From NCBI GenBank assembly GCA_002104945.1, contig MCFH01000060.1, forward strand, positions 1-64,000: a stretch of DNA of 64,000 nt. The letters run 5' to 3'. Below the pieces are notes generated by a model that searched no databases, was not told where the DNA came from, and saw only the letters and a list, made by a program, of their open reading frames with translations. Each line of letters opens with the position of its first letter. The stretch's first letter is position 1. Origin of the DNA: Piromyces finnis finn (taxonomy: Eukaryota; Fungi; Neocallimastigomycota). Shown in pieces: positions 5,380 through 42,321 of this stretch. A program made the position numbers and the translations under genes.

Positions 5380-5410
5380 AGGTCCCTTCTCAAAGACGGA
5401 TTCCAGACGT

Positions 5411-9352: not shown

Positions 9353-9419
9353 TTTGATCTTACTAAGAATAGTTAAATGTACAGTAGTTATAATAATCCA
9401 AGGTATTCTGTTAAAATAG

Positions 9420-9432
9420 AATTGAGAATTAT
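9420..9432 (-). other. Self-priming primer-binding site
   Basis: ATAATTCTCAATT (minus) abuts the 5' LTR and is complementary to LTR bases 9648-9660. It does not begin with TGG. Confidence 0.85.
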
Positions 9433-9996
9433 TATCAGGGGTTTGGCGAATAGGTTGAATTATTTTATTATTAAATAAGGTTTGATAAAAATTTAGAAAA
9501 GACAATAATAGAAATTTATTTAAAAATTTTACACAAGACTCTTTTATTAATAATTTAAGTTTAAAATTATATTTGATCTTTTATTAACATTGAAAAGTGG
9601 ACTTTTTATAAGTCAGAATAATAAAAAGGTTTTTATAGAATTTGAAAATAATTCTCAATTGAAGCTTAACTAATTATTTTTTCTTTAACTATATATACTA
9701 AAGCTTCAATTGAGGCTTTACAATTATTTTAATTTTTTATTAATAATAATTACTAATAATTACTAATTAAATAAAAATAATTAATAATAAAGATTATAAA
9801 ATTAATATTACTTCGAGAAGGTGTTATAATTCTTTTACTAAACTAAACTATTTATTCTTCTAAATTTTTCTATTTATTACTAATAACTAATTTATTAATA
9901 ATTAAGATTCTTCTACAAAAATTATTTTATTATTTAATATTAATTAAAGTTAATTATAACAAAAAAATTTTCTTAACGTAATGTAACGTATTGATA
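9433..9996 (-). repeat. 5' LTR of the Tf1-like element
   Basis: Direct repeat of 4816-5379; adjacent to the PBS at 9420-9432. Confidence 0.95.
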
Positions 9997-11181: not shown

Positions 11182-12515
11182 TGTAAAAAATATTTGTGGT
11201 GTAAAATATTGTATTAATAGAATAATGTATTTAATACGTATTTAAAATAATGTACAATGTATTGAATTAATGTACCGTAAATCTTTACAAGATTTATATC
11301 ACAATACATTAACATAAATTTATGTAAATTTTATTTTTTAATTACAAAAATTTATATCACAATACATTAACATAAATTTATGTAAAATTTAATTTTATGA
11401 TAAGATAAAGTTTTTGATGATAAAATAAAATTTTAAATTAAATAAATTTTAACCAATAAATATTTTAGATAATAAAAAATTTTTTTTATAAACTAAGTCT
11501 CAAAATTAGAAATAAATAAATTGAATATATGTTTGAAATATAATCAACCATATAGTAAATAAATCAAAACTTTATTTTAAGTTTAGAAAATTCTTTATTA
11601 AATAAATTGAATTTAAATAGTTTAATACAAATAATTTCTTTTAATAAATGTATAAATGTAAACAATGTAAAATTATAATATTAAAACATGTATATTAGAA
11701 TTTATTCAATTTATTTAAAAAGTATAAATAAAGAAAATTTTTCAACTATTGAAACGATAGTTGGAAAATCGTATAGATTAATTTTGTTTAGATAAATTAA
11801 CATTAGTTTATAATTAGTTTATAGTTTAGATTAATAATTTTAGTTTTAAATAAATATAAATTGATTACCTAGTGAGGGCTCTGGTGAAATATCCTTCACG
11901 GTAAAGTAATCAACGGTTGTTTAGTTAGTATAGTTTTAAAAATAAATAAATAAATAAATAAAAATTATTATTAAAAATAATTAGTTTAATTGTTAGTTTA
12001 GTGTTGTATACAAACCTGAACTTTAGAATATTTTACAATAAGTTTGCCCACAAATATTTCAATTGAAACCATATATTCTGGTCACCATTTATTGGCCAGA
12101 TATATGTATAACCATATATTAATGGTTATTAATTAAATAGGAAGTTTATTTGCTTTACCCAATCAAGTGGTAAAGAAAATAAACTAATATAGTTAAATAG
12201 TATAGTTAAAACTAACGTTAAATACTTTAGCGTTAGTATTAGAGTAAATTAGTAACTATAATAATAATTAATGTATATAATTATAATTAATAAATAAAAG
12301 ATATAATTAATATAGAATTATTTAAGTAAACATTATTTCATAAAATCTTTATACATTTGTTTGTAATTATTTTAGTGTTATAATATTTATTTTATTTCTT
12401 TTATTATTTTTTATAAAACTTTGTTTAGTTATTAACTCGTATAGAGAGGTAATAACTAACTTAATTAACTAAATTATATAACTTATTAACTAATATTATA
12501 AAAACACCTTTTACA
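11182..12515 (+). mobile_element. Solo LTR family G (copy G1), interrupted by D1
   Basis: TGTAAAAAATATTTGTGG...CACCTTTTACA; homologous to 19153-20756 and 33598-34908; followed by ATTAT. Confidence 0.85.
11200..12037 (+). mobile_element. Solo LTR family D (copy D1)
   Basis: TGTAAAATATT...ATATTTTACA; homologous to 12539-14059 (inverted) and 33617-34424. No TSD; about 2 bp of G are missing at the junction. Confidence 0.85.
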
Positions 12516-12538
12516 ATTATTTTATGCAATAATTTTAT

Positions 12539-14059
12539 TGTAAAATATTCTAAAGTTCAGGTTTGTATACAACATGTCATGAATATTAGTGGATTCATGA
12601 TTATTTATTTAATTAGTGTTTTATTCGTTTAATTAATTAGAAATATTTTATTATAAAACATAATTAAATAATATTTTAAGAAATATTAATTAATTATAAT
12701 TATTAAGATTTTTATTTATTAAAGTTTGAATTAATATTTCTTTGTTCATTTGATTAAGAAGGAAATTAAAACTAAATTATAAAATAATCATTCCTTCTAC
12801 AAATGATTGATAATATGACTTTTATAATTATTAAATTTAACACGAGTGAAAAGTCATATATAATTAATATATAATTAATTTATAGAATAGTTAATTAATA
12901 TAAATAATTAGTCATGTATTAAATTTAAAATGTATTCCTTAATATTAGAGATAGTATAAATACTCGAGAAAATTCCTATCATTAGGAATTTCGAGAGTTC
13001 ATTACATTTAATATTTACTCTAATTATAATAATAACTAATAAATAAAGATTTTTCTTTAAATAAAAATTTATTAATAAATAAAGTTAATAAAATATTATT
13101 TATTTAAAAATTTACTAATTCATTTATTTAATTAATTGATAAACTTAGGATAAATATGTACGTTCCGACCTAACTGAAGTGAATCCTTACCACAACACTA
13201 AACTAACAATTAAACTAATTATTTTTAATAATAATTTTTATTTATTTATTTATTTATTTTTAAAACTATACTAACTAAACAACCGTTGATTACTTTACCG
13301 TGAAGGATATTTCACCAGAGCCCTCACTAGGTAATCAATTTATATTTATTTAAAACTAAAATTATTAATCTAAACTATAAACTAATTATAAACTAATGTT
13401 AATTTATCTATACTAAATTAACCTATACGATTTTCCAACTATCGTTTCAATAGTTGAAAAATTTTCTTTATTTATACTTTTTAAATAAATTGAATAAATT
13501 CTAATATACATGTTTTAATATTATAATTTTACATTGTTTACATTTATACATTTATTAAAAGAAATTATTTGTATTAAACTATTTAAATTCAATTTATTTA
13601 CTAAAGAATTTTCTAAACTTAAAATAAAGTTTTTATTTATTTACTATTTGGTTGATTATATTTCAAACATATATTCAATTTATTTATTTCTAATTTTGAG
13701 ACTTAGTTTATAAAAAAAAATTTTTTTTATTATCTAAATATTTATTGGTTAAAATTTATTTAATTTAAAATTTTATTTTATCATCAAAAACTTTATCTTA
13801 TCATAAAATTAAATTTTACATAAATTTATGTTAATGTATTGTAATATAAATTTTTGTAATTAAAAAATAAAATTTACATAAATTTATGTTAATGTATTGT
13901 AATATAAATTTTTGTAATTAAAAAATAAAATTTACATAAATTTATGTTAATGTATTGTGATATGAATTTTATGGAAATTTACGGTACATTAATTTAATAC
14001 ATTATACAATATTTTAAATACGTATTAAATACATTATTCTATTAATACAATATTTTACA
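12539..14059 (-). mobile_element. Solo LTR family D (copy D2), interrupted by E1
   Basis: Inverted copy of D1; TSD TTTAT at 12534-38 and 14060-64. Confidence 0.88.
12575..13192 (+). mobile_element. Solo LTR family E (copy E1)
   Basis: TGTCATG...CCTTACCA; TSD CAACA at 12570-74 and 13193-97; inverted copy at 17472-18091. Confidence 0.9.
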
Positions 14060-14099
14060 TTTATTATATGCATTAATATTTCACATAATAAAATTATTA

Positions 14100-15097
14100 T
14101 GTGAAGATATTAACTGGATTTAAAACAAATTCAGATAATATCTATAATTAATTAAACATAATAATTAGAATTAAATGATCCCAATAATTATTTTAAAACA
14201 CCTTTAAAAGTCACCTTTTAAATTTTGGTTCAGTGAAAGGGTTATGATTTCAAAAAATTTAATATCAATACACTATAACCCTTAGCCAAAAATAAACAAA
14301 TACGAAACTACGCATAACTCGCCAAAAACGAGTGCTACGGCTGTAAGTACTACGGCTATGAAACTAGGTTTATTAGAAAGCTTAAGGGAAAAGCTATATT
14401 TTGGTATAATCGCGGTCCTTCTAACTGGTCATTTAAGGAAGATATGATCATTTGAAGATTTTAATAAGTAAATTAAAATTAATATGATATCAAGTATGGA
14501 TCATAGACATTTCTTATGACTTGACGAAAATTAAAAATATATCAATAGAAATTCTAATTATATTAATTTAATTAATGATAGTGACTGTTACTAAAAATAG
14601 AACTAAACCATTTAGGTGTAACAGTTAACATTTATAAATTAAATAATTTTAATTATTATAAAATAGATTAATGGATCAAGTGTTTAAATGATTAATCATA
14701 TGTTTATTTTATTTTATGTCATGACAAAACAAACAAACAAACAAACAAACAATCTTATTATATTATTAACATATTACATGTAATACTTTATTTTTATCAA
14801 TTTAATAATCTGAACAAAGAATATAAAATAGAATGAATTGAATTTGATTTTAATTCTTTGTAAAGATTATAGTTATAATCTTAATTATATAGTTATTAAA
14901 TATATTATCATTTATATTATTATTAATAAATAAATAAAATTTTATAAAAAAAAGTTATTCTAAAGAATAAATATTAATTTTTCATTTGGAAGTTTAAAGG
15001 GTTATTTTATATTTAAATTTAATTTCTTAAAAACATATTTACTATATAATTGATAACATTCTGACCTGGCCGCATAACCAAATCCAAAAACTTAACA
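14100..15097 (+). mobile_element. Solo LTR family F (copy F1)
   Basis: TGTGAAG...CTTAACA, 998 bp; TSD TATTA at 14095-99 and 15098-102; copies at 18097-19094 and 41321-42321. Confidence 0.9.
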
Positions 15098-15164
15098 TAT
15101 TAGCTACATTTTAACACTAATTGTTAAAATGAGATAATGATAATGAAACTATTTATTAAAATAA

Positions 15165-15681
15165 AGAAGAATATACTTATCGAGTTTATTATAAGAGCCT
15201 ATAAATAACGTTTGTGTTAGGGTTTTAGAATATTTTTTATTACAAGAATGTTTTATTTATGTTAAAAGTGTATCAATTTATTTATGTTATTTATTATAAT
15301 TTCTTATAATAATAACTCTTGATTTTCAAATGAAACTCAAGAGGTCTTTTTATATAAAAACTTAAAGAATAAAAGAAAGTTCTAATCTTAATAAATTTCT
15401 TTTCTAGAAAAAGATTAGAAGAAAAAACTAGAAAAGTTTCGATTGATAATCTATTCTTATCAATCATCGTATTATTAGATAAAACCGAATGGATTCGGGA
15501 AAATTCTAATAATCGATTTTTTCTAAATACAATAATTTACATTACATTTAAAATACATTATGTATTATAATAAAATTTAATAAAATTTAATAAAATATTA
15601 AAGGTTAAATAAAAAATATAATAAATTATTTTTAATAAGAAATATAGATTATTTATTATAAAATAAATCTAATTTCTTACA
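15165..15681 (+). mobile_element. Diverged solo LTR family M (copy M1); left boundary uncertain
   Basis: Homologous to 37177-37857 and ends ATTTCTTACA. Followed by AATAA; a possible left AATAA copy is at 15160-64. Confidence 0.6.
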
Positions 15682-15687
15682 AATAAA

Positions 15688-16291
15688 TGGTACAACCTGT
15701 TTGTTTTGTTTGTACCTTTATATGGATCAATACAACTAGAATGAATAAAACAATTATTATATTATAATGAAATAACACAACAATAAAAAATGATTTTTAT
15801 ATTTTATGTATTATTTTTTATATTCTTTTTATTTATCTTTGATCAATAATGTACTATTAATGATTTAAACTCTTATAATAGAAATAAATAAGTATAATTC
15901 ACTAGATTATAATCTGAATATCACTATTAATTCCTACTTAAATCTAATAATATTATTTATCTATCTAGTATTATCACTTATGCCTATTTTCTTATTATTA
16001 TTTCTTATTATCTTTTTATATCGTTTCTTCTTTTAATATTTATTAATTCTCTTTTATTAAATACTCTTTGTTGTAATTAAGGTTTTTAGTCTTTTTAATT
16101 AATTTTATTTATAATTTTTATTTTAGTTATTGCTATAAGCGTTATTAATTAAATCAATAATTGTTAGCTTATAAATTTATATATTAAATTTTTATTAAAC
16201 CTAAAATACTTAAAGTAGAATTATTATTAGTAAAATTAAAGGTTAAATTGGAATTCCTATGCTCTTACATTTTTCTGAATCAGTCGTACCA
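15688..16291 (-). mobile_element. Solo LTR family O (TGATA-type)
   Basis: Terminal inverted repeat TGGTAC...GTACCA; 4-bp TSD TAAA at 15684-87 and 16292-95. Confidence 0.75.
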
Positions 16292-16297
16292 TAAAGC

Positions 16298-16921
16298 TGT
16301 CACAATAACATATATAAAAATTTAAAAAATTTGGACACATGGAAAAAATTAAAAATTTTTTTAAAATTTGAAAATTTGAAAATTTGAAAAAATTTATTTT
16401 TTAAATTTTTATTAAAAAATTTCAAAGTATAAAATTTCTAATATTTGAAATTATTAAATTTTTTAAAATTATTAAAATTTTATTATTAAAAATTTTATTT
16501 TAAATTTATTTATTAACTATTTACAATAATTATATTAATTATTAATTTATAAAAATTAAATATTTTATAATTAGATAATAATTAATTAAAATTAAAAAAT
16601 GTAATAATTAAAATTGTTCATGTATAAAAAGAACAAAAATTGACAAAAATTACGAAGCTTTAGCGTTAGTAATTTTTTTTAACTTAAAGTTAATAAAATT
16701 TATAAACTTCTATAAAACCTAAAACTTTAAAAATTTTAATATTTTTAATAACTTAATATATGCTGATATTAAGTTATTGCTAAAATAAAAATATTATTTA
16801 ATTTTCTTTATATAAATATTATTAGCTTTATGCCTTCAATAGGAAAGCGTATTATATTTGTTAATTAATATAACTAGTATGCTTACCACACTTTTCTTTA
16901 ATAAAAAATCGCTTTTTGACA
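16298..16921 (+). mobile_element. Solo LTR family A (copy A1)
   Basis: TGTCACAAT...GCTTTTTGACA, same as the LTRs of the element at 26936-33594. TSD AAAGC at 16293-97; the right copy is split by J1 and is restored when J1 is removed. Confidence 0.92.
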
Positions 16922-16955
16922 AATGATAAATAATTAAATTTATAAATTATGAATT

Positions 16956-17010
<55 letters not shown>

Positions 17011-17084
17011 TTAAAACACAGATAGTTGAAAATTAAAATAATTAACATGTATAAAATTATTAAATTAAAAATTATAAATGTAAA

Positions 17085-17115
<31 letters not shown>

Positions 17116-17471
17116 TAAATTAAATAGTTTATATTTGTTTATAACTATACTTTAAAATAATAATTTTGTATAAATAGTGATAGAAAATGTTCTTTTTAAA
17201 AGATGTTCCTAATAATCCAGTAAAATTAGATAATAATATTAAATTTAATTAAAATTATAGTTGTGATTATATTTACATACATTCAAGATGTATTAAACCA
17301 TAACATATATATATTTAATAATACAAGAGTTATTAAATATTAAAACTTTATAATTAAATAAAATAATTTTATATTTTAAACTAACAAAGACTTGCAAATG
17401 AACAAGTATAAAAATCATTTATTTTATTTTATTTTTTTTTATTTTTTTTTTAGATACAAATATTATCACTT

Positions 17472-18091
17472 TGTTAAGGATTTCACTTCAGTTAGGTCGG
17501 AACGTACATATTTATCCTAAGTTTATCAATTAATTAAATAAATGAATTAGTAAATTTTTAAATAAATAATATTTTATTAACTTTATTTATTAATAAATTT
17601 TTATTTAAAGAAAAATCTTTATTTATTAGTTATTATTATAATTAGAGTAAATATTAAATGTAATGAACTCTCGAAATTCCTAATGATAGGAATTTTCTCG
17701 AGTATTTATACTATCTCTAATATTAAGGAATACATTTTAAATTTAATACATGACTAATTATTTATATTAATTAACTATTCTATAAATTAATTATATATTA
17801 ATTATATATGACTTTTCACTCGTGTTAAATTTAATAATTATAAAAGTCATATTATCAATCATTTGTAGAAGGAATGATTATTTTATAATTTAGTTTTAAT
17901 TTCCTTCTTAATCAAATGAACAAAGAAATATTAATTCAAACTTTAATAAATATAAAATCTTAATAATTATAATTAATTAATATTCCTTAAAATATTATTT
18001 AATTATGTTTTATAATAAAATATTTCTAATTAATTAAACGAATAAAACACTAATTAAATAAATAATCATGAATCCACTAATATTCATGACA
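17472..18091 (-). mobile_element. Solo LTR family E (copy E2)
   Basis: Inverted copy of E1; flanked by CACTT at 17467-71 and 18092-96. Confidence 0.9.
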
Positions 18092-18096
18092 CACTT

Positions 18097-19094
18097 TGTT
18101 AAGTTTTTGGATTTGGTTATGCGGCCAGGTCAGAATGTTATCAATTATATAGTAAATATGTTTTTAAGAAATTAAATTTAAATATAAAATAACACTTTAA
18201 ACTTCCAAATGAAAAATTAATATTTATTCTTTAGAATAATTTTTTTTATAAAATTTTATTTATTTATTAATAATAATATAAATGATAATATATTTAATAA
18301 CTATATAATTAAGATTATAACTATAATCTTTACAAAGAATTAAAATCAAATTCAATTCATTCTATTTTATATTCTTTGTTCAGATTATTAAATTGATAAA
18401 AATAAAGTATTACATGTAATATGTTAATAATATAATAAGATTGTTTGTTTGTTTGTTTGTTTGTTTTGTCATGACATAAAATAAAATAAACATATGATTA
18501 ATCATTTAAACACTTGATCCATTAACCTATTTTATAATAATTAAAATTATTTAATTTATAAATGTTAACCGTTACACCTAAATGGTTTAGTTCTATTTTT
18601 AGTAACAGTCACTATCATTAATTAAATTAATATAATTAGAATTTCTATTAATATCTTTTTAATTTTCATCAAGTCATAAGAAATGTCTATGATCTATACT
18701 TGATATCATATTAATTTTAATTTACTTATTAAAATCTTCAAATGATCATATCTTCCTTAAATGACCAGTTAGAAGGACCGCGATTGTACCAAAATGTAGC
18801 TTTTTCCTTAAGCTTTCTAATAAACCTGGTTTTATAGCCGTAGCACTTACAGCCGTAGCACTCGTTTTTGGCGAGTTATGCGTAGTTTCGTATTTGTTTA
18901 TTTTTGGCTAAGGGTTATAGTGTATTGATATTAAATTTTTTTGAAATCATAACCCTTTCACTGAATCAAAATTTAAAAGGTGACTTTTAAAGGTGTTTTA
19001 AAATAATTATTGGGATCATTTAATTCTAATTATTATGTTTAATTAATTATAGATATTATCTGAATTTGTTTTAAATCCAGTTAATATCTTCACA
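18097..19094 (-). mobile_element. Solo LTR family F (copy F2)
   Basis: Inverted copy of F1; flanked by CACTT at 18092-96 and 19095-99. Confidence 0.9.
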
Positions 19095-19152
19095 CACTTT
19101 CTATATTCATTTATAGAATTAAGATAATATTTTTCTTCGTATCAACAAAAGC

Positions 19153-20756
19153 TGTAAGAAATATTTGTGGCCATAAGTTTGCCCACAAATATTTCAATTG
19201 AAACCATATATTCTGGTCACCATTTATTGGCCAGATATATGTATAACCATATATTAATGGTTATTAATTAAATAGGAAGTTTATTTGCTTTACCCAATCA
19301 AGTGGTAAAGAAAATAAACTAATATAGTTAAATAGTATAGTTAAAACTAACGTTAAATACTTTAGCGTTAGTATTAGAGTAAATTAGTAACTATAATAAT
19401 AATTAATGTATATAATTATAATTAATAAATAAAAGATATAATTAATATAGAATTATTTAAGTAAACATTATTTCATAAAATCTTTATACATTTGTTTGTA
19501 ATTATTTTAGTGTTATAATATTTATTTTATTTCTTTTATTATTTTTTATAAAACTTTGTTTAGTTATTAACTCGTATAGAGAGGTAATAACTAACTTAAT
19601 TAGTGTAAAAGTTTTACTAAACTTATAATTTAATATTAAAATATTAAATTAAATAAAAGGTTAAAAGATAACTAGGTTAGAAAAAAAATGTTTTATTAAA
19701 ATAATCTTAATTGATTTATAAATGAATAATTAAATTATATATTATGGTTAAAATAATTTCTTTTATTTTATTTAATGATATATTGCTAAAATATATAATA
19801 ATAAGATTATTTAGTAGTAATACTCATTAAGTATTAATTATTATTAATAGTTAATAATTTATAGTTAATAATTTAATAATTTATGGTTAATAATTTTTGG
19901 TTAATAATCTTTACAAAGATTTTAATTTCATAAACTATTCTAAACTATTTATACTATTTGTAATTTTACATTTAATAATAAAATAACTTTTCAATACATG
20001 ATTATATTCATAATATATTTTATAATACTAAGGTTAAACTTAAGACTTATTACTAATTATTAAAAATAACTATTGTCTATATATTCATAATATTAATTAT
20101 TTCTTAATTATAATATAATTCATTGAATATAATATTAATAATTTATAATCTTTTAATTCAAAAATTATAAGCTATGTTATTGAAATAATTATTATAAAAT
20201 AAAGTTAATTAGTTCCGGAAAATAATTTTGATTTAATTAAACAATAATTTTTATACTTTGAGTGAATGATTTATGTTTGATATATCAGGGGTGATCATTC
20301 TCTGAATAAACAATTAATCATTGCTAACAAAATATCTTTAAATTGGAATATCTCGTGAACCAGCAGAGATATTGACCTGATTTTAAGATATGTTGTTTGT
20401 CTCGAGCGTGGCTTTCTAACGAACGTAATTATAACCAAAATATTTTTATTCAAAAATCGTCATTCGTTGAGGAGATACGCGTGTTTTTCCTTATTCCATT
20501 TTAACGATAAGGGTTAAAGTTATTTATTATAAAAATTATTAAGGGTTAAGGTCATATTTTAACCTTTTCTAAATTTTTAAATATTTCTTAATAAAATTTT
20601 ATAATTTATTTGAAAATAAAATATTTGTTGATTTTGAAATTTCATAAGTGATTTCACAATTCCAAGTGATCTTGAAATTGTATTTTCACTAGTATTCGTG
20701 ACAATTAGCTAAATATTAATAACTTATTAACTAATATTATAAAAACACCTTTTGCA
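19153..20756 (+). mobile_element. Solo LTR family G (copy G2), containing H1
   Basis: TGTAAGAAAT...CCTTTTGCA; TSD AAAGC at 19148-52 and 20757-61; the TSD ends 8 bp before tRNA-Ser. Confidence 0.9.
19604..20703. mobile_element. Solo LTR family H (copy H1)
   Basis: TGTAA...GTGACA, 1100 bp; TSD ATTAG at 19599-603 and 20704-08; its end matches (inverted) 42912-42997. Confidence 0.85.
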
Positions 20757-20769
20757 AAAGCAATGTTAA

Positions 20770-20851
20770 GTCAGTTTGTCCGAGTGGTTAAGGAGTCAGA
20801 CTTGAAATCTGATGGGCTTTGCCCGCGCAGGTTCAAACCCTGCAGCTGACG
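20770..20851 (+). tRNA. tRNA-Ser (anticodon TGA)
   Basis: Acceptor stem GTCAGTT/AGCTGAC, D loop CGAGTGGTTAAGG, anticodon arm TCAGA-CTTGAAA-TCTGA, long variable arm, GTTCAAACC T loop. Confidence 0.97.
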
Positions 20852-20861
20852 AATGATTTAA

Positions 20862-20869
20862 TTTTTTTT
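20862..20869 (+). terminator. Pol III T-run terminator of tRNA-Ser
   Basis: T8 starting 11 bp after the tRNA 3' end. Confidence 0.7.
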
Positions 20870-21229
20870 AAAAATGTTAAAATTATAATGAAATAATTTT
20901 ATATTTTATTTACTATTAATTAATTATATAATTATATATTATTTAAATTTTTATGTATTAATTAAATTAATTATATGAAAAGTATAATTTTATTTAATAT
21001 TATATAAATATATATTTTTTACTATTATTAAAATGTAGTTCTTTTCATAATATAAGAAAAGACATTATTAAATAACTTGTATTAAATAATAATAAATATT
21101 AATAACAAATATTAATAAATAAATAATAATAAATAAATATAAAATAATATATATACATATTATACAAATATTTATTTATAAAGTGTTGGTGTTATATAAA
21201 ATATTATAATAATAATATTTAATCATAAA

Positions 21230-21244
21230 AGATTAAGAGTCTCA
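21230..21244 (+). other. PBS complementary to the anticodon arm of tRNA-Lys(CUU)
   Basis: AGATTAAGAGTCTCA; its reverse complement TGAGACTCTTAATCT is the conserved eukaryotic tRNA-Lys-CTT anticodon arm. Confidence 0.8.
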
Positions 21245-21258
21245 ATTGTCTCAAGAAA

Positions 21259-24200
21259 ATGTCTAATAATAAAAATAAAAATCTACTAAGTTCAAATATG
21301 GACCCTTCTAGTTTTATAGGAAAATTCCAAATAGAACTTAATAAAGAAAATTTTCAAGCTTGGCAGATCAAAGTCAGAGATATTTTAAGATGCTGCGGTT
21401 TGGAAGAATATATTGATGAAAATAAAACTCCAAAGATATATATAAAGAATATATCAGAGAGTGAAAAAGAAAATTATAAAGAAGTCCCACATGAGCCTAA
21501 CATGTACTATAATAAAAATGTAACAGATGAAACTCTTGCTATTGATAATAAAGTAAGAATGTTTATTAGAAGTACATTGGCACCAAAATCAGTTGAAGAT
21601 GTTCAAAGTAGAACACTTACTGGTTACCAAATATGGAAAACTTTAGAAAGTATATATATAGGAAACCAATCCAGTAAGAAAACTGACCTTATTAAAGAAG
21701 TGAATAGAATGAAATACAACCCACAAGATAGTATAGCCAGTTTTGTAAATAAACTAAATTTAAAATTTGAAACATTAGAATCCATGGGAGTCCATATAGA
21801 TGAAGAAGAAAAGGCCGCCGTTTTATACAGAGCTATGCCAAAACAATACCAATGGATAAATATATTCGATTATGAAGGTAACTGGACTTTATGTAGAGAA
21901 TATGTATCAAATAGAGTTCAGTCTGTTCAAAGGTCAGAAGAAAGGGAACGAAGTAATAGGCTTGGATTTAATCAAGTTTTTAGTAGTGAAAGTGGCTATG
22001 GAAATTATGATAATTATAATCATAAAAATAATAAATTTTCAAATTATAAAAATAAAAATAATAAAAATAAAAATGATATAATATGTCATTTTTGTAATAA
22101 AAGAGGCCACATTGAAAGAAACTGCATATTTAAAGAAAAATTAGCAAAAGAATATAATTCAAACAATAAAAATTATAAAAATAAACAAAATAAAAAATAT
22201 AAAAAGAAATATGCAGATGTAGTTACAAAACAAAGAAGTAACTACAAGGATATAACACCAAATTTATTCAACGTGGATTATGATTCTACATATGAAAAAG
22301 AATCAAACAGTGTTGTAAAAGTAAATTTTTCAAATAAAAAATATAAAAAGGTTATAAAATCAAAAGGGAACTTTAGTATGTGGATGCTAGATTCAGGAGC
22401 ATCAGTTCACCTTACAAACGATATTAAATTATTATATAAAATTAAAAGACATAAAGAACCAATTTACTATGCGGATGGTGAAGTTGGTTATTCTACACAT
22501 ATAGGCAACATAAAAGGCTACTTTAATAAAGAACAAATAATTTTAAAAAATGTTTTATATGTTCCAGATATTAAAAGGAATTTAATATCTATTTCAAATT
22601 TTGTTAAAGAAGGTCTTAATGTAAATTTTAAATATATAAATAATGCTGCCACAGCATTTATCCAAGATAAAAATAAAAATAATATATATGTATCAAGAGA
22701 AGATGAACATAACATATTTAATGTTTATATATCAAAGACAAAATTATTTAACTACCAAATACAAAATCCAATGTATTGTTATTCAATTAGGAAGTTAAAT
22801 AATGATGAAAAATTACATCTTTGGCATAGAAGATTAGGTCATTTTCATGCCAAAAGTATTGAAAATAAATTATTAAATATAAACATTAAAGATATTTGTG
22901 AAACATGTTCATTATCAAAATTAAAAAATCAACCATATCATAGTTCTACTAATAAAAGTACAGAAGTACTTCAATTAGTACATACTGATATAGTTGGACC
23001 CATTAACGCGTCATCTATATACGGTAATCATTATTTTATTACCTTTTTAGATGATTATTCAAGATATGGATGGGTAATTTTTATAAAAAATAAAAGTGAC
23101 GCGTTTAACGCGTTTAAAATATGGTATAATAAAGTTACCAATGAATTTAAAAAGAATATTACATATTTAAGAAGTGATAATGGTACAGAATATAAGTCTT
23201 TAAATTTTAAAAATTTTTGTGATACTCATGGTATTACACAACAATTCACTGTACCATATAATCCACAACAAAATGGACGCGCTGAAAGGTTTAATGGAGT
23301 ACTAATCCATGCAGCTACCACTATGATGCAAGATGCTAAATTATGTAGAAGATTCTGGGAAGACGCAGTCAGAACTGCCAATTATATACATAACAGGTTA
23401 CCTCACAATGGAAATGACTTGAAGGTACCCTATGAAATGTTATATAATATCCCAGTAGACTACAGTAAATTTCGTGTTTTTGGATGTAAAGTGTTACATC
23501 TTAAACGTAACACTGAAAAACACAAATTTGAAAGCACTTCGCTACCTGGCATATTTATTGGTTATGATGACACTTCTACCGGATTCAGAATTTTTGACTT
23601 AAATTCTTTTAAAATTGTCATCAAAAGAGTAGTTGAATTTTTAGAAGACCAACCAGGTAATTTTAATTTTGATGATAACGTCAAAAATGTCAATTTCATC
23701 GATTATGATTCATTAATCAATGAAATGGAGGGGGACGATAACGAAAGTCTTCAACAGGACATAGAAATTGGCATATCATCAAACATTAATAACAATGATT
23801 TTCCAAATAATTTTAATAAAATAAAATATAATGCCAACAATAACTATATCGGCATTAATAGTAATAATAATAAGGATAATATTATTTATAACAATAATAA
23901 TAAAGAAAACATTAAAAATTATAACATAAATGAAAATAACAATTTAAATATAAATAACAATTTAAATATAAATAACAATTTAAATGAAAATAACAATTTA
24001 AATGAAAATAATATTTTAAAAGAAAATAACGATTTAAACACAAATAATAATTTAAATGAAAATAATAATTTAAATGAAAATAACAATTCAAATAAAAACA
24101 ATAATTCAAATGAAAACGATAATCCAAATAAAAACAATATTTCAGATGAAAATAATAATTCAAATGAAAGTAATGATTTAAATAAAAATAAAATAAAAAA

Positions 24201-26385
24201 TAAAAATAAAATAAAAAATAAAAATAATAATACAAAAGAAGATAATAATTTAAATAAAACAAATAAAAATATTAATGAAATATATGATGATAATGATATT
24301 AATAACATAAATCATATAAATAAATTTAATGATAATAATGACGATAACAACGTTAATATTATTAATTCACATAATAAGAATAATATAAATAATAATATAA
24401 ATAATAACTTCATTAATAATATGAAAGACAATAACAGTTATAAAATTAAAAACAACAATAATAATATTCATAAAAAGAAAAATAAAAGAAAAGTAATCGA
24501 CAGTGACGAAGAAAGTGAAGATGAAAGTAAAATTAAAATTAAAAGAAATAAATTCTTAAACAAAGAAGAAAGGATAAATAAAATAATTGAAAGCGAAAGA
24601 AAATCTAAGAACAAAATTTCTTATAAGGCTAAAGACTTGGACAATGGAATTAGTTTATCAGAATTAAATAAAAATAAACAAAAAAATAATAACTCATTAA
24701 GCTATATTCCAAACCATTCACTAGATGTAGAACAAAGACAATATCCAAATTATCCAAGGAACAAAAGAAAAATTTTGGATAATAATGAAAAGTATACAAC
24801 TAGTAAAAGAATAAGAAAAGAAATAAATAACGTTGATAAATCATCAACGACAGATAACCAAATAACAGAACCAACAAGTTTTTTTGAAATCTTTAAGAGA
24901 AAAGATAAAAGAAGATGGCTTGACGCTATAAATGATGAATTAAACAATATGAAAGAACGCAAAGTATATGAAAAAATAAACAAAGTTCCACAAAATACTA
25001 ATGTAATTACCTCAAAATGGGTGTTCAAAATTAAAAGGGATAGCAAAGGAAACATTACCAAGTATAAAGCACGCTTAGTAGCTAGAGGATTCACTCAAGA
25101 ATACGGTACGGACTACAAAGAAACATTTTCTCCAACATTAAAACATGATTCACTAAGAATTCTTACAGCTATTTCAGCAGAAAAGAAATTTTATATACAT
25201 CAATTAGATATAAAGGCAGCTTATTTATATGCTGACTTAAATGAATGTATTTATATGTATGCTCCAGAAGGAGACTCTACTTACCGAAAAGGCTATTGGA
25301 AACTAAATAAGGCACTCTATGGTCTCAAGCAAGCAGCACGAGAATGGAATAATAATATAACTGATACTTTAACTAATATTGGATTTAAAAGACTGGTAAG
25401 TGAACCCTGTATTTTCGTTAAGAAAGATGATAACAATAATATAAAATGTTTGTTAGGAATATATGTCGATGATATCCTAATATCAGGTAACAATTATGAA
25501 ATAAATAAAACTAAAGAATTACTAAAGAAAAGATACAAAGTTACCGATATTGGATATGCAGATTTTATTATTGGAATTAAATTTGAAAAATTAAACAATG
25601 GATACTTACTTCACCAAGAAAGATACCTTAGAGATATCTTAAGAAAATTCAACTTAGAAAACTGTAAACCTTGCAAAACACCTAAACCAGCAAACGAAGT
25701 TGATGATAAACAAGAAAAATATAACCCAACAAAGTATCGTGCAGCCATTGGTAGTTTACTATATCTTGCTATATCTACTAGACCAGACATTTTATTTTCA
25801 GTCACCAAAGCAGCCAGAAAATCACAAGAACCTACTTTTAAAGACTGGGAGAATGTTATTCAAATTTTTAAATACCTCAAAGGAACCATTAATTACGGAT
25901 TGCTCTATTCAGGCGAAGCTTCTTTAAAGACCTTTGTAGACGCAGACTACGGTAGTGACAAAGTAACCAGAAGATCAACCACCGGATTTGTTTTCTTCAT
26001 GGGAAGTGGTCCCACGAGTTGGTTTTCGAAACTTCAACATTGTATTGCTACCTCTACAGCTGAGTCAGAATATTACAGCTTATGTGAGTGCGGAAAACAT
26101 TCACTTTGGTATGCAAACATACTTAATGAGTTAGGGATAACTCATAAATGTACTGTAATAAACATTGACAACCAGGCAGCAATTTATAATGCTGAAAATG
26201 ATACTATTAATCCAAAATCAAAACATATTGATATTAAGTATCATAAAATAAGAGAAATGGTAAAAGAGAAAAAAATTAAATTGGAATATATCAAGTCCTT
26301 AAATAACATTGCTGATGGTTTCACAAAATATTTGGATGCTACAAAAATGTCTATTTTTAGAAATAGTTTATTACATAAATATTAA
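21259..26385 (+). CDS. gag-pol: Copia gag-pol polyprotein, 1708 aa (gag, CCHC, protease, integrase, Asn-rich linker, RT, RNase H)
   Basis: CHFCNKRGHIERNC, LDSGAS, GAG-pre-integrase HLWHRRLGH, HTDIVGP/SDNGTEY, SKWVFKIK, YVDDIL, DADY...RRSTTG, IADGFTK. Integrase precedes RT. Confidence 0.96.
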   Translation: MSNNKNKNLLSSNMDPSSFIGKFQIELNKENFQAWQIKVRDILRCCGLEEYIDENKTPKIYIKNISESEKENYKEVPHEPNMYYNKNVTDETLAIDNKVRMFIRSTLAPKSVEDVQSRTLTGYQIWKTLESIYIGNQSSKKTDLIKEVNRMKYNPQDSIASFVNKLNLKFETLESMGVHIDEEEKAAVLYRAMPKQYQWINIFDYEGNWTLCREYVSNRVQSVQRSEERERSNRLGFNQVFSSESGYGNYDNYNHKNNKFSNYKNKNNKNKNDIICHFCNKRGHIERNCIFKEKLAKEYNSNNKNYKNKQNKKYKKKYADVVTKQRSNYKDITPNLFNVDYDSTYEKESNSVVKVNFSNKKYKKVIKSKGNFSMWMLDSGASVHLTNDIKLLYKIKRHKEPIYYADGEVGYSTHIGNIKGYFNKEQIILKNVLYVPDIKRNLISISNFVKEGLNVNFKYINNAATAFIQDKNKNNIYVSREDEHNIFNVYISKTKLFNYQIQNPMYCYSIRKLNNDEKLHLWHRRLGHFHAKSIENKLLNINIKDICETCSLSKLKNQPYHSSTNKSTEVLQLVHTDIVGPINASSIYGNHYFITFLDDYSRYGWVIFIKNKSDAFNAFKIWYNKVTNEFKKNITYLRSDNGTEYKSLNFKNFCDTHGITQQFTVPYNPQQNGRAERFNGVLIHAATTMMQDAKLCRRFWEDAVRTANYIHNRLPHNGNDLKVPYEMLYNIPVDYSKFRVFGCKVLHLKRNTEKHKFESTSLPGIFIGYDDTSTGFRIFDLNSFKIVIKRVVEFLEDQPGNFNFDDNVKNVNFIDYDSLINEMEGDDNESLQQDIEIGISSNINNNDFPNNFNKIKYNANNNYIGINSNNNKDNIIYNNNNKENIKNYNINENNNLNINNNLNINNNLNENNNLNENNILKENNDLNTNNNLNENNNLNENNNSNKNNNSNENDNPNKNNISDENNNSNESNDLNKNKIKNKNKIKNKNNNTKEDNNLNKTNKNINEIYDDNDINNINHINKFNDNNDDNNVNIINSHNKNNINNNINNNFINNMKDNNSYKIKNNNNNIHKKKNKRKVIDSDEESEDESKIKIKRNKFLNKEERINKIIESERKSKNKISYKAKDLDNGISLSELNKNKQKNNNSLSYIPNHSLDVEQRQYPNYPRNKRKILDNNEKYTTSKRIRKEINNVDKSSTTDNQITEPTSFFEIFKRKDKRRWLDAINDELNNMKERKVYEKINKVPQNTNVITSKWVFKIKRDSKGNITKYKARLVARGFTQEYGTDYKETFSPTLKHDSLRILTAISAEKKFYIHQLDIKAAYLYADLNECIYMYAPEGDSTYRKGYWKLNKALYGLKQAAREWNNNITDTLTNIGFKRLVSEPCIFVKKDDNNNIKCLLGIYVDDILISGNNYEINKTKELLKKRYKVTDIGYADFIIGIKFEKLNNGYLLHQERYLRDILRKFNLENCKPCKTPKPANEVDDKQEKYNPTKYRAAIGSLLYLAISTRPDILFSVTKAARKSQEPTFKDWENVIQIFKYLKGTINYGLLYSGEASLKTFVDADYGSDKVTRRSTTGFVFFMGSGPTSWFSKLQHCIATSTAESEYYSLCECGKHSLWYANILNELGITHKCTVINIDNQAAIYNAENDTINPKSKHIDIKYHKIREMVKEKKIKLEYIKSLNNIADGFTKYLDATKMSIFRNSLLHKY
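23912..24130 (+). repeat. Coding 18-bp tandem repeat (consensus about AATAACAATTTAAATGAA; NNNLNE)
   Basis: About 10 degenerate units visible in both DNA and translation. Confidence 0.85.
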
Positions 26386-26849
26386 ATGAATATTAAATGA
26401 ATATTAAATGAATATTAAATAAAAGTATTTATACTTTTGGGAGAATGTTAAAATTATAATGAAATAATTTTATATTTTATTTACTATTAATTAATTATAT
26501 AATTATATATTATTTAAATTTTTATGTATTAATTAAATTAATTATATGAAAAGTATAATTTTATTTAATATTATATAAATATATATTTTTTACTATTATT
26601 AAAATGTAGTTCTTTTCATAATATAAGAAAAGACATTATTAAATAACTTGTATTAAATAATAATAAATATTAATAACAAATATTAATAAATAAATAATAA
26701 TAAATAAATATAAAATAATATATATACATATTATACAAATATTTATTTATAAAGTGTTGGTGTTATATAAAATATTATAATAATAATATTTAATCATAAA
26801 AAAAAATATAAAAATAAATATATTTTAAAAAATTTAATAATAAATAATA

Positions 26850-26921
26850 AGGGGCGTTCCGGATTTGAACCGAAGACCTATTGATCTGCAGTCAATTGCT
26901 CTACCGCTGAGCTAACACCCC
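26850..26921 (-). tRNA. tRNA-Cys (anticodon GCA)
   Basis: Minus strand reads GGGGTGTTAGCTCAGCGGTAGAGCAATTGACTGCAGATCAATAGGTCTTCGGTTCAAATCCGGAACGCCCC; full cloverleaf; T6 run at 26827-32. Confidence 0.97.
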
Positions 26922-28011
26922 TTTTTATTAATTTGTTTCAAAAAGCGATTTTTTATTAAAGAAAAGTGTGGTAAGCACACTAGTTATATTAATTAATAAA
27001 TATAATACGCTTTCCTATTGAAGGCGTAAAGCTAATAATATTTATATAAAGAAATTTAAATAATATTTTTATTTTAGCAATAACTTAATATCAGCATATA
27101 TTAAGTTATTAAAAATATTAAAATTTTTAAAGTTTTAGGTTTTATAGGAGTTTATAAATTTTATTAACTTTAGGTTAAAAAATTACTAACGCTAAAGCTT
27201 CGTAATTTTTGTCAATTTTTGTTCTTTTTATACATGAACAATTTTAATTATTACATTTTTTAATTTTAATTAATTATTATCTAATTATAAAATATTTAAT
27301 TTTTATAAATTAATAATTAATATAATTATTGTAAATAGTTAATAAATTTAAATTAAAATTTTTAATAATAAAATTTTAATAATTTTAAAAAATTTAATAA
27401 TTTCAAATATTAGAAATTTTATACTTTGAAATTTTTTAATAAAAATTTAAAAAATAAATTTTTTCAAATTTTCAAATTTTCAAATTTTAAAAAAAATTTT
27501 TAATTTTTTCCATGTGTCCAAATTTTTTAAATTTTTATATATGTTATTGTGACACTGCCCGTCCTAAGGGTCGTTTCGCCGGACGACCCAAAAAATTATG
27601 GACACTGGCACGTCATAATAATTTGGACATGGACACTTCCACGACACTTAGAAGAATTTTGAGAATTTTCAAAAAATGGAAATTCTCAATTTTTGAAAAA
27701 ATCTAAGTGTTGAAAAAGTGAAGTGTAAAAGTGTTCAAGAAAAGTTGAGAGGGTATCACGTGGATTCTTCAGAAATGGAGACTACACGTGAAGGTTAGGG
27801 AAATGATATGACTCGAGGGGAAGCGGATTTTGGGGTGCGGAAAAGGTTGCGAAATTTGAGGGTTGAGGGCAAAGGCGAAAGAGGGTGGTTGGGTAGCGGA
27901 ATAGTGGTTGGTAGTTGTAGTGGTGGCGACTAGTGGGTAGCGGAGTTGTGGGTAGTAGGTGGGGTAGTGGCGATAGGTGGGTAGTGAAGGAGTAAGGGTG
28001 GTAGACACTAG

Positions 28012-32895: not shown

Positions 32896-32965
32896 TAAAC
32901 TTTAATTATTATATTTAGTTATTAATAATTACTAACTAATTGGTGCTTAGCGCACTTTTATAATA

Positions 32966-41320: not shown

Positions 41321-42321
41321 TGTGAAGATATTAACTGGATTTAAAACAAATTCAGATAATATCTAATTAATTAAACATAATAATTATAATTAAATGATTT
41401 CAATGATTATTTTAAAACACCTTTAAAAGTCACCTTTTAAATTTTGATTCAGCAAAAGGGTTATGATTTCAAAAATTTAATATCAATACACTATAACCCT
41501 TAACCAAAAATAAACAAACACGAAACAAAGCGTAACTCGCCAAAAACGAACGCTACGGCTATAAGTACTACGGTTGTGGAACTAAGTTTATTAGAAAGCT
41601 TAAGGAAAAAGCAATATTTTGGTACAATCGCGGTCATTCTAACTGGTCATTTAAGAAAGATATGGTCATTTGAAGATTTTAATAAGTAAATTAAAATCAA
41701 TATGATATCAAGTATGGATCATAGACATTTCTTATGACTTGACGAAAATTAAAAATATATCAATAGAAATTTTAATTATATTAATTTAATTAATGATAGT
41801 GACTGTTACTAAAAATAGAACTAAACCATTTAGGTGTAACAGTTAACATTTATAAATTAAATAATTCTAATTATTATAAAATAGGTTAATGGATCAAGTG
41901 TTTAAATGATTAATCATGTTTATTTTATTTTATTTATTTTATGTCATGACAAAACAAACAAACAAACAAACAAACAATCTTATTATGTTATTAATATATT
42001 ACATGTAATACTTTATTTTTATCAATTTAATAATCTGAACAAAGAATATAAAATAGAATGAATTGAATTTGATTTTAATTCTTTGTAAAGATTATAGTTA
42101 TAATCTTAATTATATAGTTATTAAATATATTATCATTTATATTATTATTACTAAATAAATAAAATTTTATAAAAAAGTTATTCTAAAAAATAAATATTAA
42201 TTTTTCATTTGGAAGTTTAAAGTGTTATTTTATATTTAAATTTAATTTCTTAAAAAACATATTTACTATATAATTAATAACATTCTGACCTGGCCGCATA
42301 ACCAAATCCCAAAACTTAACA
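41321..42321 (+). mobile_element. Solo LTR family F (copy F3)
   Basis: TSD TGATA at 41316-20 and 42322-26. Confidence 0.9.

What the first reader, a model, noticed from the sequence alone, without database searches (positions are those of the whole stretch)
15165..20769. Second stack of 8 insertions upstream of tRNA-Ser, with exact reuse of the same 5-bp targets
Seen: AAAGC (-13..-9) occurs three times, flanking A1 and G2; one copy is split by J1 (TSD ACAAA). CACTT occurs three times, flanking E2 and F2 back-to-back. O has TSD TAAA at -14..-11, and M1 is followed by AATAA at -16..-12. The same families as at tRNA-Cys use the same offsets at a different tRNA with different flanking sequence. 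Inference: position relative to the tRNA, not target sequence, determines the site.
Basis: partly seen in the sequence, partly recalled or inferred. Interest (0 to 1): 0.88.

Follow-up and report, generated by a model that had tools for sequence, protein, structure and literature searches.

The report
Retrotransposon pile-up at fixed tRNA offsets
Eight retrotransposon remnants are piled up just upstream of one tRNA-Ser gene of an anaerobic gut fungus. Each landed at one of two nucleotide-precise distances from the gene (about 12 or 64 bases upstream), so these elements aim by distance from the tRNA gene, as yeast Ty3 does, and not by target sequence.

Summary
Upstream of tRNA-Ser(UGA) (20770-20851) lie eight TG..CA elements with 4-5 bp target-site duplications (TSDs). 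They are M1, O, A1, J1 (holding E2 and F2) and G2 (holding an eighth element that I call N).

- AAAGC occurs three times, flanking A1 and G2; J1 (TSD ACAAA) splits the middle copy.
- CACTT occurs three times, flanking E2 and F2.

The insertions fall into discrete registers.

- **Proximal register.** A1, G2, J1, O and M1 have TSDs within -16..-9. Ten insertions at tRNA-Cys lie within -17..-7.
- **Distal register.** At tRNA-Cys there are two more, at -66..-62 and -67..-63. A third stack gives the same spacing.
- The seven distal-register insertions sit in four different sequence contexts and all point the same way as the tRNA.
- **Possible third register.** Family H may use -31..-27.

M1's left end (15165) is not verifiable.

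The host is a Neocallimastigomycota fungus. This is Ty3-like Pol III-directed integration, a known kind. The lineage and the precise distal register for LTR elements appear undescribed. Other first readers noted the distal register on other DNA of this genome. All attempts to find supporting loci outside the window failed.

The parts
20770..20851 (+). tRNA-Ser(UGA) gene, the landmark from which all offsets are measured. It is intact and followed by a T8 run.
   Evidence: ARAGORN; Rfam RF00005, 58.5 bits
15165..15681 (.). M1, the oldest and most distal LTR-like remnant. Its 3' end ..TTTCTTACA is followed by AATAA (-16..-12 after peeling). Its left boundary is unresolved.
   Evidence: 72-78% similar to a complete M copy at 37178-37857, which has TSD CAACA and termini TGTAAGAA..TTCTTACA. 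No TG start was found.
15688..16291 (+). O, a 604-bp single-copy LTR-like element (TGGTAC..GTACCA) with TSD TAAA at -14..-11.
   Evidence: No other copy in the window.
16298..16921 (+). A1, a solo LTR of gypsy family A (TGTCAC..TTGACA) with TSD AAAGC at -13..-9. Same orientation as the tRNA.
   Evidence: 97-99% identical to four other A LTRs. Junctions, peeling.
16924..19144 (+). J1, a solo LTR of about 590 bp (TGATAAAT..CGTATCA) that carries E2 and F2. TSD ACAAA, made of the last 3 nt of A1 plus AA, at -16..-12.
   Evidence: A second J copy lies at 41270-42854.
17472..18091 (+). E2, a distal-register solo LTR (TGTTAAGG..CATGACA) with TSD CACTT at -66..-62 once G2 is peeled.
   Evidence: 99.5% identical to the copy at 12575-13192. 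TSD and offset.
18097..19094 (+). F2, a distal-register solo LTR (TGTTAAGT..CTTCACA) with TSD CACTT at -66..-62 once G2 is peeled.
   Evidence: 98.4% identical to 14100-15097 and 94.4% to 41321-42321. TSD and offset.
19153..20756 (+). G2, the most proximal solo LTR (TGTAAGAAAT..CTTTTGCA, about 500 bp without N). TSD AAAGC at -13..-9, measured directly.
   Evidence: Alignment with the G copies at 12020-12515 and 34418-34908.
19604..20703 (+). N, the eighth element, nested in G2 (TGTAAAAG..CGTGACA). TSD ATTAG at 19599-19603 and 20704-20708, which is -66..-62 measured directly with nothing removed.
   Evidence: Its last 90 nt match 42912-43001, which follow a gypsy integrase fragment.
41321..42321 (-). 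Comparator: an F copy inside the second J copy in the tRNA-Cys stack. TSD TATCA, 3 bp away from the CACTT site within J, at -66..-62 from tRNA-Cys.
   Evidence: The offset was counted from the AATTA TSD at -12..-8.
12516..15102 (-). Comparator: the third stack. The TSDs of G-a (ATTAT), H-b (TTTAT) and F-c1 (TATTA) start 18 and 53 nt apart. These spacings equal those between -13..-9, -31..-27 and -66..-62. E-c1 lies 31 nt inside H-b.
26850..26921 (-). tRNA-Cys(GCA), the landmark of the neighbouring stack used for comparison. Its 5' end is 26921.
   Evidence: Rfam, 67.9 bits. ARAGORN adds one base.

Best explanation
The region is a time-ordered pile of solo LTRs and nested LTR-retrotransposon remnants. 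They were made by repeated integrase-mediated insertion aimed at the tRNA-Ser gene itself. Each new element lands at a fixed distance from the gene and pushes older ones outward. Later recombination between an element's two LTRs reduces most of them to solo LTRs.

Two registers are shown.
- A proximal register has TSDs within -17..-7. This is about where RNA polymerase III should start transcription. It is used by families A, G, J, M, O and K, in either orientation.
- A distal register has TSDs at -66..-62. It is used by families E, F and N, always in the same orientation as the tRNA.

Exact reuse of a pentamer (AAAGC twice, CACTT twice) follows directly. After an insertion, the TSD copy nearer the tRNA sits at the same offset as before and is hit again.

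The mechanism is inferred, not shown. The integrase, or its intasome, is probably tethered to the Pol III initiation complex on the tRNA gene, as Ty3 integrase is tethered to TFIIIB. Different families would contact different faces: one at the start site, the other just upstream of the TFIIIB-covered DNA.
For: **Element ends and TSDs.** TG..CA ends and matching TSDs were found for seven of the eight elements. The joint chance probability is about 1e-15. Family membership rests on 94-99% identical copies elsewhere in the window.

**Element type.** Family A is the LTR of a full-length Ty3/gypsy element (Pfam). The family K polyprotein is closest to Ty3 Gag-Pol, PDB 7q5b. A family N LTR end follows a gypsy integrase fragment.

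**Proximal register.** There are 5 insertions at tRNA-Ser and 10 at tRNA-Cys. All have TSDs within -17..-7 and show no target consensus.

**Distal register.**
- N is at -66..-62, measured directly.
- E2 and F2 are at -66..-62 once G2 is peeled.
- At tRNA-Cys, an F copy is at -66..-62 and an N-like end at -67..-63.
- In the third stack, F-c1 and E-c1 fit the same spacing.
- The targets lie in four unrelated contexts: the J tail, the G tail, the H tail and spacer DNA. The distance to the nearest LTR end varies from 31 to 48 nt, while the distance to the tRNA stays constant.
- All 7 of 7 are co-oriented with the tRNA (two-sided p = 0.016).

**Relative ages.** J1's TSD contains A1's terminal ACA, so J1 is younger than A1.

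**Integrity of the target.** The tRNA genes are intact.
Against: - Only three stacks in one 64-kb window were examined, and the tRNA of the third is outside the window.
- Most offsets rest on peeling, which assumes that elements nearer the tRNA are younger. The order of J1 and G2 cannot be read from the structure alone. Only G2 and N at tRNA-Ser, and the full-length A element at tRNA-Cys, are direct measurements.
- M1 has no definable left end.
- Several TSDs (O, K, P, Q, S) are 4 bp, or 5 bp if the element's last A is reassigned.
- J-type elements often show ACAA in their TSD, which could hint at some sequence preference.
- One complete gypsy element (about 4798-9995) lies in the middle of another LTR and fits no register.
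- The transcription start site was not mapped, and no protein contact was tested.
- Every attempt to find loci outside the window gave nothing.
Confidence: 0.85

Rival explanations
1. Sequence-directed targeting. The integrases would recognise a short DNA motif or the junction at an existing LTR end (for example ..ACA|A), so elements pile onto each other whatever the tRNA does.
For: Many TSDs include the last 2-3 nt of the neighbouring LTR. J-type elements show ACAA(A) in five of six cases. Four of the seven distal-register insertions lie in the tail of J, within the 8-mer TATCACTT.
Against: TSD sequences show no consensus within a register. The insertion site within J shifts by 3 bp in step with the position of J's end, which keeps the distance to the tRNA constant. 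N, F-c1 and E-c1 hit unrelated sequences at the same distance. The distance to the nearest LTR end varies from 31 to 48 nt. Only the tRNA-facing side of each stack is used. The recurring ACAA is what one expects if J lands 2-3 nt upstream of the A and G sites and every LTR ends in ACA.
Confidence: 0.07
2. Untargeted insertion followed by selection. Elements would insert anywhere, and only those in harmless DNA next to tRNA genes would survive and accumulate.
For: The genome has long AT-rich, gene-poor stretches filled with transposon remains. One gypsy element is inserted mid-LTR at no register.
Against: Selection cannot produce single-nucleotide reuse of the same pentamer, two sharp registers 50 bp apart, or a strict orientation rule in the distal register.
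Confidence: 0.04
3. Artefact or rearrangement. The repeated pentamers and stacked LTRs would come from tandem duplication, unequal crossing-over, gene conversion between stacks, or misassembly of repeats.
For: The same families recur in three neighbouring stacks. Near-identical copies lie close together in inverted orientation, which favours conversion. The read-level check could not be run.
Against: The units between repeated pentamers are different families (A1 versus J1 and G2; E2 versus F2), so they are not duplicates of each other. The F-in-J junctions differ between stacks (CACTT versus TATCA), so these are separate events. Every element has its own matching TSD.
Confidence: 0.03

Closest known systems
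Ty3 of Saccharomyces cerevisiae, and the Ty3-like elements Tj1 (S. japonicus), Tyl3/Ylt1/Tyl6 (Yarrowia) and Tca8/beta (Candida)
   Same: These are Ty3/gypsy LTR elements with a 5-bp TSD. They integrate within a few bp of the Pol III start site, about 12-17 bp upstream of the mature tRNA 5' end, in both orientations, and leave solo LTRs (PMC5911963 Table 1; PMC5006619). The proximal register here (-17..-7) matches. The family K polyprotein is closest to Ty3 Gag-Pol, PDB 7q5b.
   Different: The host is an early-diverging fungal phylum (Neocallimastigomycota). At least six or seven unrelated LTR families share the site. Stacks reach 8-13 insertions per tRNA. Family A carries an SH3/chromodomain-like integrase tail. 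No TFIIIB contact has been tested.
DGLT-A of Dictyostelium and other dictyostelids
   Same: A Ty3/gypsy element found 13-33 bp (on average 15 bp) upstream of tRNA genes, mostly as solo LTRs, in an AT-rich compact genome (PMC5006619).
   Different: Unrelated host. The window here is narrower, and it comes with a second discrete register.
TRE5-A (Dictyostelium) and NLTR-B (Polysphondylium), non-LTR retrotransposons
   Same: They insert at a fixed distance well upstream of the tRNA (40-54 and 39-64 bp), beyond the DNA covered by TFIIIB, and TRE5-A does so in a fixed orientation. TRE5-A ORF1 binds TFIIIB subunits (PMC5911963).
   Different: Those are LINE-like elements that insert by target-primed reverse transcription. 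E, F and N have TG..CA ends and 5-bp TSDs, which means integrase-mediated insertion. Their register (-66..-62) is sharper and lies further out.
Ty1, Ty2 and Ty4 (copia elements of S. cerevisiae)
   Same: They insert upstream of Pol III genes, further out than Ty3.
   Different: Ty1 uses a window of about 1 kb with nucleosome periodicity, through integrase contacts with Pol III subunits (PMC5911963, PMC7459421). It has no single-nucleotide register. The one N-type copy with coding sequence is gypsy-like, not copia.

Membership tests
Ty3-like Pol III start-site-targeting LTR retrotransposons | Ty3/gypsy (Metaviridae) coding capacity, with domain order protease-RT-RNase H-integrase | tested here: met
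   Family A (28906-32895) and family K (750-4268) have RVT_1, RT_RNaseH and Integrase_H2C2 (K also rve; the A copy's integrase core is degenerate). K's best solved relative is Ty3 Gag-Pol, 7q5b, E = 7e-111. Families G, J, M and O have no coding copy in the window.
Ty3-like Pol III start-site-targeting LTR retrotransposons | LTR ends TG..CA with a 5-bp target-site duplication | tested here: met
   A1, J1, G2, E2, F2 and N have 5-bp TSDs; O has 4 bp.
Ty3-like Pol III start-site-targeting LTR retrotransposons | Integration within a few bp of the Pol III transcription start, about 12-17 bp upstream of the mature tRNA 5' end | tested here: inconclusive
   The TSDs of 15 insertions lie within -17..-7 of the mature 5' end, which is the expected place. 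The start site itself was not mapped.
Ty3-like Pol III start-site-targeting LTR retrotransposons | Both orientations relative to the target gene | tested here: met
   Families A and G each occur in both orientations relative to the tRNA (A1 against the A copy at 35723-36333; G2 against G::H-c). The two K copies are both opposite to the tRNA, and the J copies all co-oriented.
Ty3-like Pol III start-site-targeting LTR retrotransposons | Targeting depends on integrase binding to TFIIIB (Brf1/TBP) on an assembled promoter | not testable with these tools
   Needs binding or integration assays.
TRE5-like distal upstream targeting (non-LTR) | LINE-type structure: no LTRs, a poly(A) or A-rich 3' end, variable TSD, insertion by target-primed reverse transcription | tested here: not met
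   E, F and N have TG..CA ends, exact 5-bp TSDs and solo-LTR size (0.6-1.1 kb). An N-type end follows a gypsy integrase fragment. They behave like TRE5 in position and orientation but are not members.
Ty1-like upstream-window targeting (copia) | Insertions spread over several hundred bp upstream with about 80-bp periodicity | tested here: not met
   Seven distal insertions fall within a 1-nt spread, at -66..-62 or -67..-63.

The most novel reading that the evidence does not exclude
LTR retrotransposons of anaerobic gut fungi may read the Pol III pre-initiation complex as a multi-stop ruler. Different gypsy families would dock at different faces of the complex and integrate at family-specific, nucleotide-precise registers. 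The registers would be -12 +/- 3 (either orientation), -66..-62 (always co-oriented with the tRNA) and perhaps -31..-27 (family H). A precise distal register for integrase-driven elements is not among the known tRNA-targeting systems. It would imply a tethering contact different from the Ty3-TFIIIB one.
Probability: 0.55. Interest if true: 0.8.

Novelty: new variant of a known kind. Interest (0 to 1): 0.66.

Why it matters
Position-specific integration next to Pol III genes is the classic case of transposons finding safe sites. It has been worked out in budding yeast and Dictyostelium. These stacks extend it in three ways.

- **A new lineage.** They place it in an early-diverging fungal phylum. 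Full-text searches found no description of it there.
- **Many families, one gene.** Many unrelated LTR families converge on the same gene.
- **A second register.** They reveal a sharp second register about 50 bp further upstream, with a strict orientation rule.

The stacks are a natural record of repeated integration. From such records the footprint of the Pol III initiation complex could be inferred.

Anaerobic gut fungi have few genetic tools. An element that inserts at a predictable, harmless site next to tRNA genes could be a lead for targeted gene delivery.

Tried and rejected
**Searches for loci outside the window all failed.**
1. Exact-pattern scans of metagenome contigs, with the F LTR 3' end and with a 36-nt piece of the tRNA-Ser, gave no hits.
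2. I fetched contigs encoding relatives of the A-type and K-type polyproteins. None of the 22 contigs fetched this way carries a tRNA. Most are short assemblies that end in the LTRs or are tandem assembly artefacts.
3. The window's own A and copia ORFs are not on record as gene products.
4. I looked for synteny around the HSF-type gene in three Neocallimastix assemblies. There is no tRNA within 10 kb, so no empty orthologous site was found.

**Readings considered and dropped.**
- J plus F as one composite unit copied between stacks. Rejected because the junctions differ (CACTT versus TATCA).
- G2 as a 1.6-kb LTR. Rejected because it is a G LTR of about 500 bp with N nested in it.
- A start for M1 at 15138 (TGATAATG, with flank GATAA versus AATAA). 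This is only a 4-of-5 match and remains unresolved.
- A hidden Pol III gene inside J as the target of E and F. Rfam and ARAGORN find only the two tRNAs.


Full report
**Setting.** The window is extremely AT-rich: 13-18% G+C outside coding parts. It carries two tRNA genes. tRNA-Ser(UGA) is at 20770-20851 on the + strand. tRNA-Cys(GCA) is on the - strand; Rfam places it at 26850-26921 with a normal 7-bp acceptor stem, so its 5' end is 26921. The large ORFs are retrotransposon polyproteins: three Ty3/gypsy, one Ty1/copia and one non-LTR reverse transcriptase. There is also one host gene, an HSF-type factor. The best named full-length relative of that host gene is from Neocallimastix lanati, at 61% identity over its whole length. 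The next named hits are Mucoromycota and Zoopagomycota.

**Checking the observation.** I read 15000-21000, compared it with the rest of the window by BLAST, and aligned every junction with the other copies of each family. A script then verified ends and flanks. From the tRNA outward:

| Element | Coordinates | Ends | TSD |
|---|---|---|---|
| G2 | 19153-20756 | TGTAAGAAAT..CTTTTGCA | AAAGC (19148-19152, 20757-20761) |
| N, inside G2 | 19604-20703 | TGTAAAAG..CGTGACA | ATTAG |
| J1 | 16924-19144 | TGATAAAT..CGTATCA | ACAAA |
| E2, inside J1 | 17472-18091 | TGTTAAGG..CATGACA | CACTT |
| F2, inside J1 | 18097-19094 | TGTTAAGT..CTTCACA | CACTT |
| A1 | 16298-16921 | TGTCAC..TTGACA | AAAGC (left copy intact, right copy split) |
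| O | 15688-16291 | TGGTAC..GTACCA | TAAA |
| M1 | ?-15681 | ..TTTCTTACA | followed by AATAA |

- G2 is not a 1.6-kb element.
- CACTT occurs three times, at 17467, 18092 and 19095, flanking E2 and F2.
- A1 is a solo LTR of the full-length gypsy element at 26936-33594. AAAGC lies on its left. On its right are AA, then J1, then ACAAA and AGC.
- With the local composition, a 5-mer matches by chance with p = 0.006. The joint probability for all the TSDs is about 1e-15.
- The one weak point is M1. It is only 72-78% similar to a complete M copy (37178-37857, TSD CAACA), and only in its central part. No 5' end can be recognised. So 15165 is a guess, and AATAA is a flank, not a proven duplication.

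**What the stack is.** All elements have integrase-type ends and are of solo-LTR size (0.5-1.1 kb). Family A is shown to be the LTR of a Ty3/gypsy element. An N-type LTR end at 42912-43001 follows a gypsy integrase fragment. Family K (TGTTAAGG...), which occurs in the neighbouring stacks, is the LTR of a gypsy element whose closest solved relative is Ty3 Gag-Pol, PDB 7q5b. The units between repeated pentamers belong to different families, which rules out tandem duplication.

**Offsets at tRNA-Ser.** Elements were removed from the tRNA outward, each with one TSD copy.
- G2: -13..-9, measured directly.
- J1: -16..-12.
- A1: -13..-9.
- O: -14..-11.
- M1's flank: -16..-12.
- N: -66..-62, measured directly with nothing removed.
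- E2 and F2: both -66..-62 once G2 is removed.

The CACTT pair therefore does not belong to the same site as the others.

**Comparison with tRNA-Cys.** I read the - strand from 43300 to 33560 and peeled the proximal elements by script.

Proximal register:
- Full-length A: CAAAT, -14..-10. The last CA of its 3' LTR is mutated to AA.
- G::H composite (34908-33598, reversed): AATTA, -12..-8.
- Q: ACAA, -14..-11.
- A copy at 35723-36333 (reversed): ATTAA, -11..-7.
- K solo LTR: CAAA, -14..-11.
- M copy: CAACA, -17..-13.
- P: ACAA, -15..-12.
- A copy at 41261-40640: AATTA, -12..-8.
- Second J copy: ACAAA, -15..-11.
- Remnant of a third J: about -14..-10.

Distal register:
- An F copy sits inside the second J with TSD TATCA. 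Within J this is 3 bp from the CACTT site, yet it lies at -66..-62 from tRNA-Cys. That J ends 1-2 nt closer to its tRNA and has a 1-nt shorter tail, which offsets the 3-bp shift.
- An N-type end sits in the third J remnant, at -67..-63.
- The differing junctions (CACTT versus TATCA) show these are independent events and not a copied composite.

**The third stack (11182-15102).** Its tRNA lies outside the window. After H-b (with E-c1 nested in it) and F-c1 are removed, the TSDs of G-a, H-b and F-c1 start at positions 1, 19 and 54 of one continuous spacer. These spacings of 18 and 53 nt are exactly those between -13..-9, -31..-27 and -66..-62. E-c1 lies 31 nt inside H-b, which puts it at -67..-63. 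This fits a minus-strand tRNA to the left of the window, as another note proposed.

Family H may define a third register at about -31..-27. It is found there three times: as H-b, and inside two G copies 14 nt from the G end that faces the tRNA, with TSD GTGAC at tRNA-Cys. I treat this as tentative. The G::H composites could have been copied as units or homogenised by conversion.

**Distance or sequence?** The seven distal-register insertions lie in four unrelated contexts: the J tail, the G tail, the H tail and spacer DNA. Their TSDs are CACTT (twice), TATCA (twice), ATTAG, TAATA and TGTTG. Their distance to the nearest LTR end varies from 31 to 48 nt, while their distance to the tRNA varies by at most 1 nt. 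All seven point the same way as the tRNA (two-sided p = 0.016). Proximal-register families occur in both orientations. Proximal TSDs have no consensus. Within the proximal register there is a hint of family preference: A and G centre near -11, J and M near -14. The frequent ACAA in J-type TSDs can be explained by J landing 2-3 nt upstream of the A and G sites, on an LTR that ends in ACA. A mild sequence preference cannot be excluded.

**Mechanism.**
- Shown: repeated, independent, integrase-type insertions at fixed distances from three tRNA genes, with the tRNA genes left intact.
- Inferred from Ty3 biology (PMC5911963, PMC5006619): the intasome is tethered to the Pol III initiation complex. 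The proximal register is where the start site should lie, about 10-12 bp upstream of the mature end, as for Ty3 with TFIIIB. The distal register lies just beyond the DNA that TFIIIB normally covers. Until now only the non-LTR elements TRE5-A and NLTR-B were known to land in that region.
- The strict orientation in the distal register suggests an asymmetric contact. None of this was tested here.

**Limits.**
- There are three stacks in one window, and most offsets depend on the peeling order.
- The order of J1 and G2 is not fixed by the structure. It is supported only because it puts E2 and F2 on the same offset as the directly measured N.
- One complete gypsy element (about 4798-9995, TSD AAATG) lies in the middle of a K LTR at no register. 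So not every insertion follows the rule.

**Relation to what is known.** The review table of tRNA-targeting retrotransposons (PMC5911963) lists three kinds of LTR element:
- start-site-proximal ones: Ty3, Ty3p, Tj1, Tca8, Tyl3, Ylt1, Tyl6 and DGLT-A;
- those with a 1-kb upstream window: Ty1, Ty2 and Ty4;
- downstream ones: Skipper-2.

Distances of 40-64 bp upstream are listed only for non-LTR elements. Full-text searches that combined Neocallimastigomycota or anaerobic fungi with retrotransposons and tRNA genes found nothing relevant. So the proximal register is a new instance of a known kind in a new lineage. The distal register for LTR elements looks like a new variant.

**Earlier notes of this scan.** After I had derived the distal register, I found that other first readers had noted a distal window at about 60-68 bp on other pieces of this genome (s1-078630, s1-173529, s1-190310). 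These notes are unchecked and are not independent proof. They do show that the scan had seen the pattern before on other DNA.

**Verdict.** This is Ty3-like Pol III-directed integration with at least two family-specific registers. This particular stack is one of many such stacks in the genome. Its value lies in the exact reuse of pentamers and in the directly measured -66..-62 insertion.

Noticed in passing
window 20875-26808: A full-length Ty1/copia element lies between the 3' ends of the two convergent tRNA genes. Its ORF is 21259-26385 (gag, integrase, RVT_2), and the two LTRs are 100% identical over 358 bp. It starts 23 nt after the end of tRNA-Ser, just past the T8 terminator run, and ends about 41 nt from the 3' end of tRNA-Cys. 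The flanks are AAAAA and TAAAA. It may represent a downstream targeting mode, or chance.
   Followed up: partly
window 23825-24403: About 24 copies of an 18-nt repeat lie inside the copia polyprotein ORF. They encode an Asn-rich low-complexity stretch between the integrase and reverse-transcriptase parts.
   Followed up: no
window 11182-12515 and 33598-34908: Two G::H composites: an H LTR (11-nt terminal inverted repeat TGTAAAATATT, internal 58-bp tandem repeats) is nested 14 nt from the 5' end of a G LTR. The TSD is GTGAC in one composite; in the other the right copy is deleted. The G parts are 99-100% identical but the H parts only about 90%. With H-b (12539-14059, TSD ATAAA on the - strand, TTTAT on +) this suggests a third register at about -31..-27.
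   Followed up: partly
window 4798-9995: A complete gypsy element (ORF 5411-9505 on the - strand, LTRs 99.6% identical, ends TATCAGGGG..TATTGATA, TSD AAATG) is inserted in the middle of the 3' LTR of the K element. It is far from any tRNA register, so it is an exception to the targeting rule.
   Followed up: partly
window 27560-28908 (- strand): The full-length family A element has 99.5% identical LTRs, but the reading frame between the integrase zinc finger and the SH3/chromodomain-like tail is full of stop codons. This copy is probably defective. The last CA of its 3' LTR reads AA.
   Followed up: partly
window 42670-42860 against 16950-17010: The (TAA)n microsatellite inside family J runs to about 190 bp in the tRNA-Cys copy and about 60 bp in J1.
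   Followed up: no
window 20720-20756, 16885-16921: The tRNA-facing tails of the G and A LTRs place A/T-rich TATA-like runs (TATAAAAA, TAATAAAAAA) at about -36..-25 of the tRNA. Each new insertion would thus replace the upstream promoter region with a similar one. In DNA this AT-rich that may be chance.
   Followed up: no
window 26921/26922: ARAGORN gives tRNA-Cys an 8-bp acceptor stem and a 5' end at 26922. Rfam gives 26921. All tRNA-Cys offsets depend on this choice by 1 nt.
   Followed up: yes
window 48635-53158: A 1507-aa ORF holds a non-LTR-type reverse transcriptase (RVT_1 only). It lies beyond the distal end of the tRNA-Cys stack, and its target preference was not examined.
   Followed up: no
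loci L017-L028 and protein P0208: Relatives of the K polyprotein at 66-75% identity are abundant in ENA and JGI gut metagenome assemblies, and one is a gene model of an Orpinomyces genome (Orpsp1_1). So this gypsy lineage is widespread among anaerobic gut fungi.
   Followed up: partly
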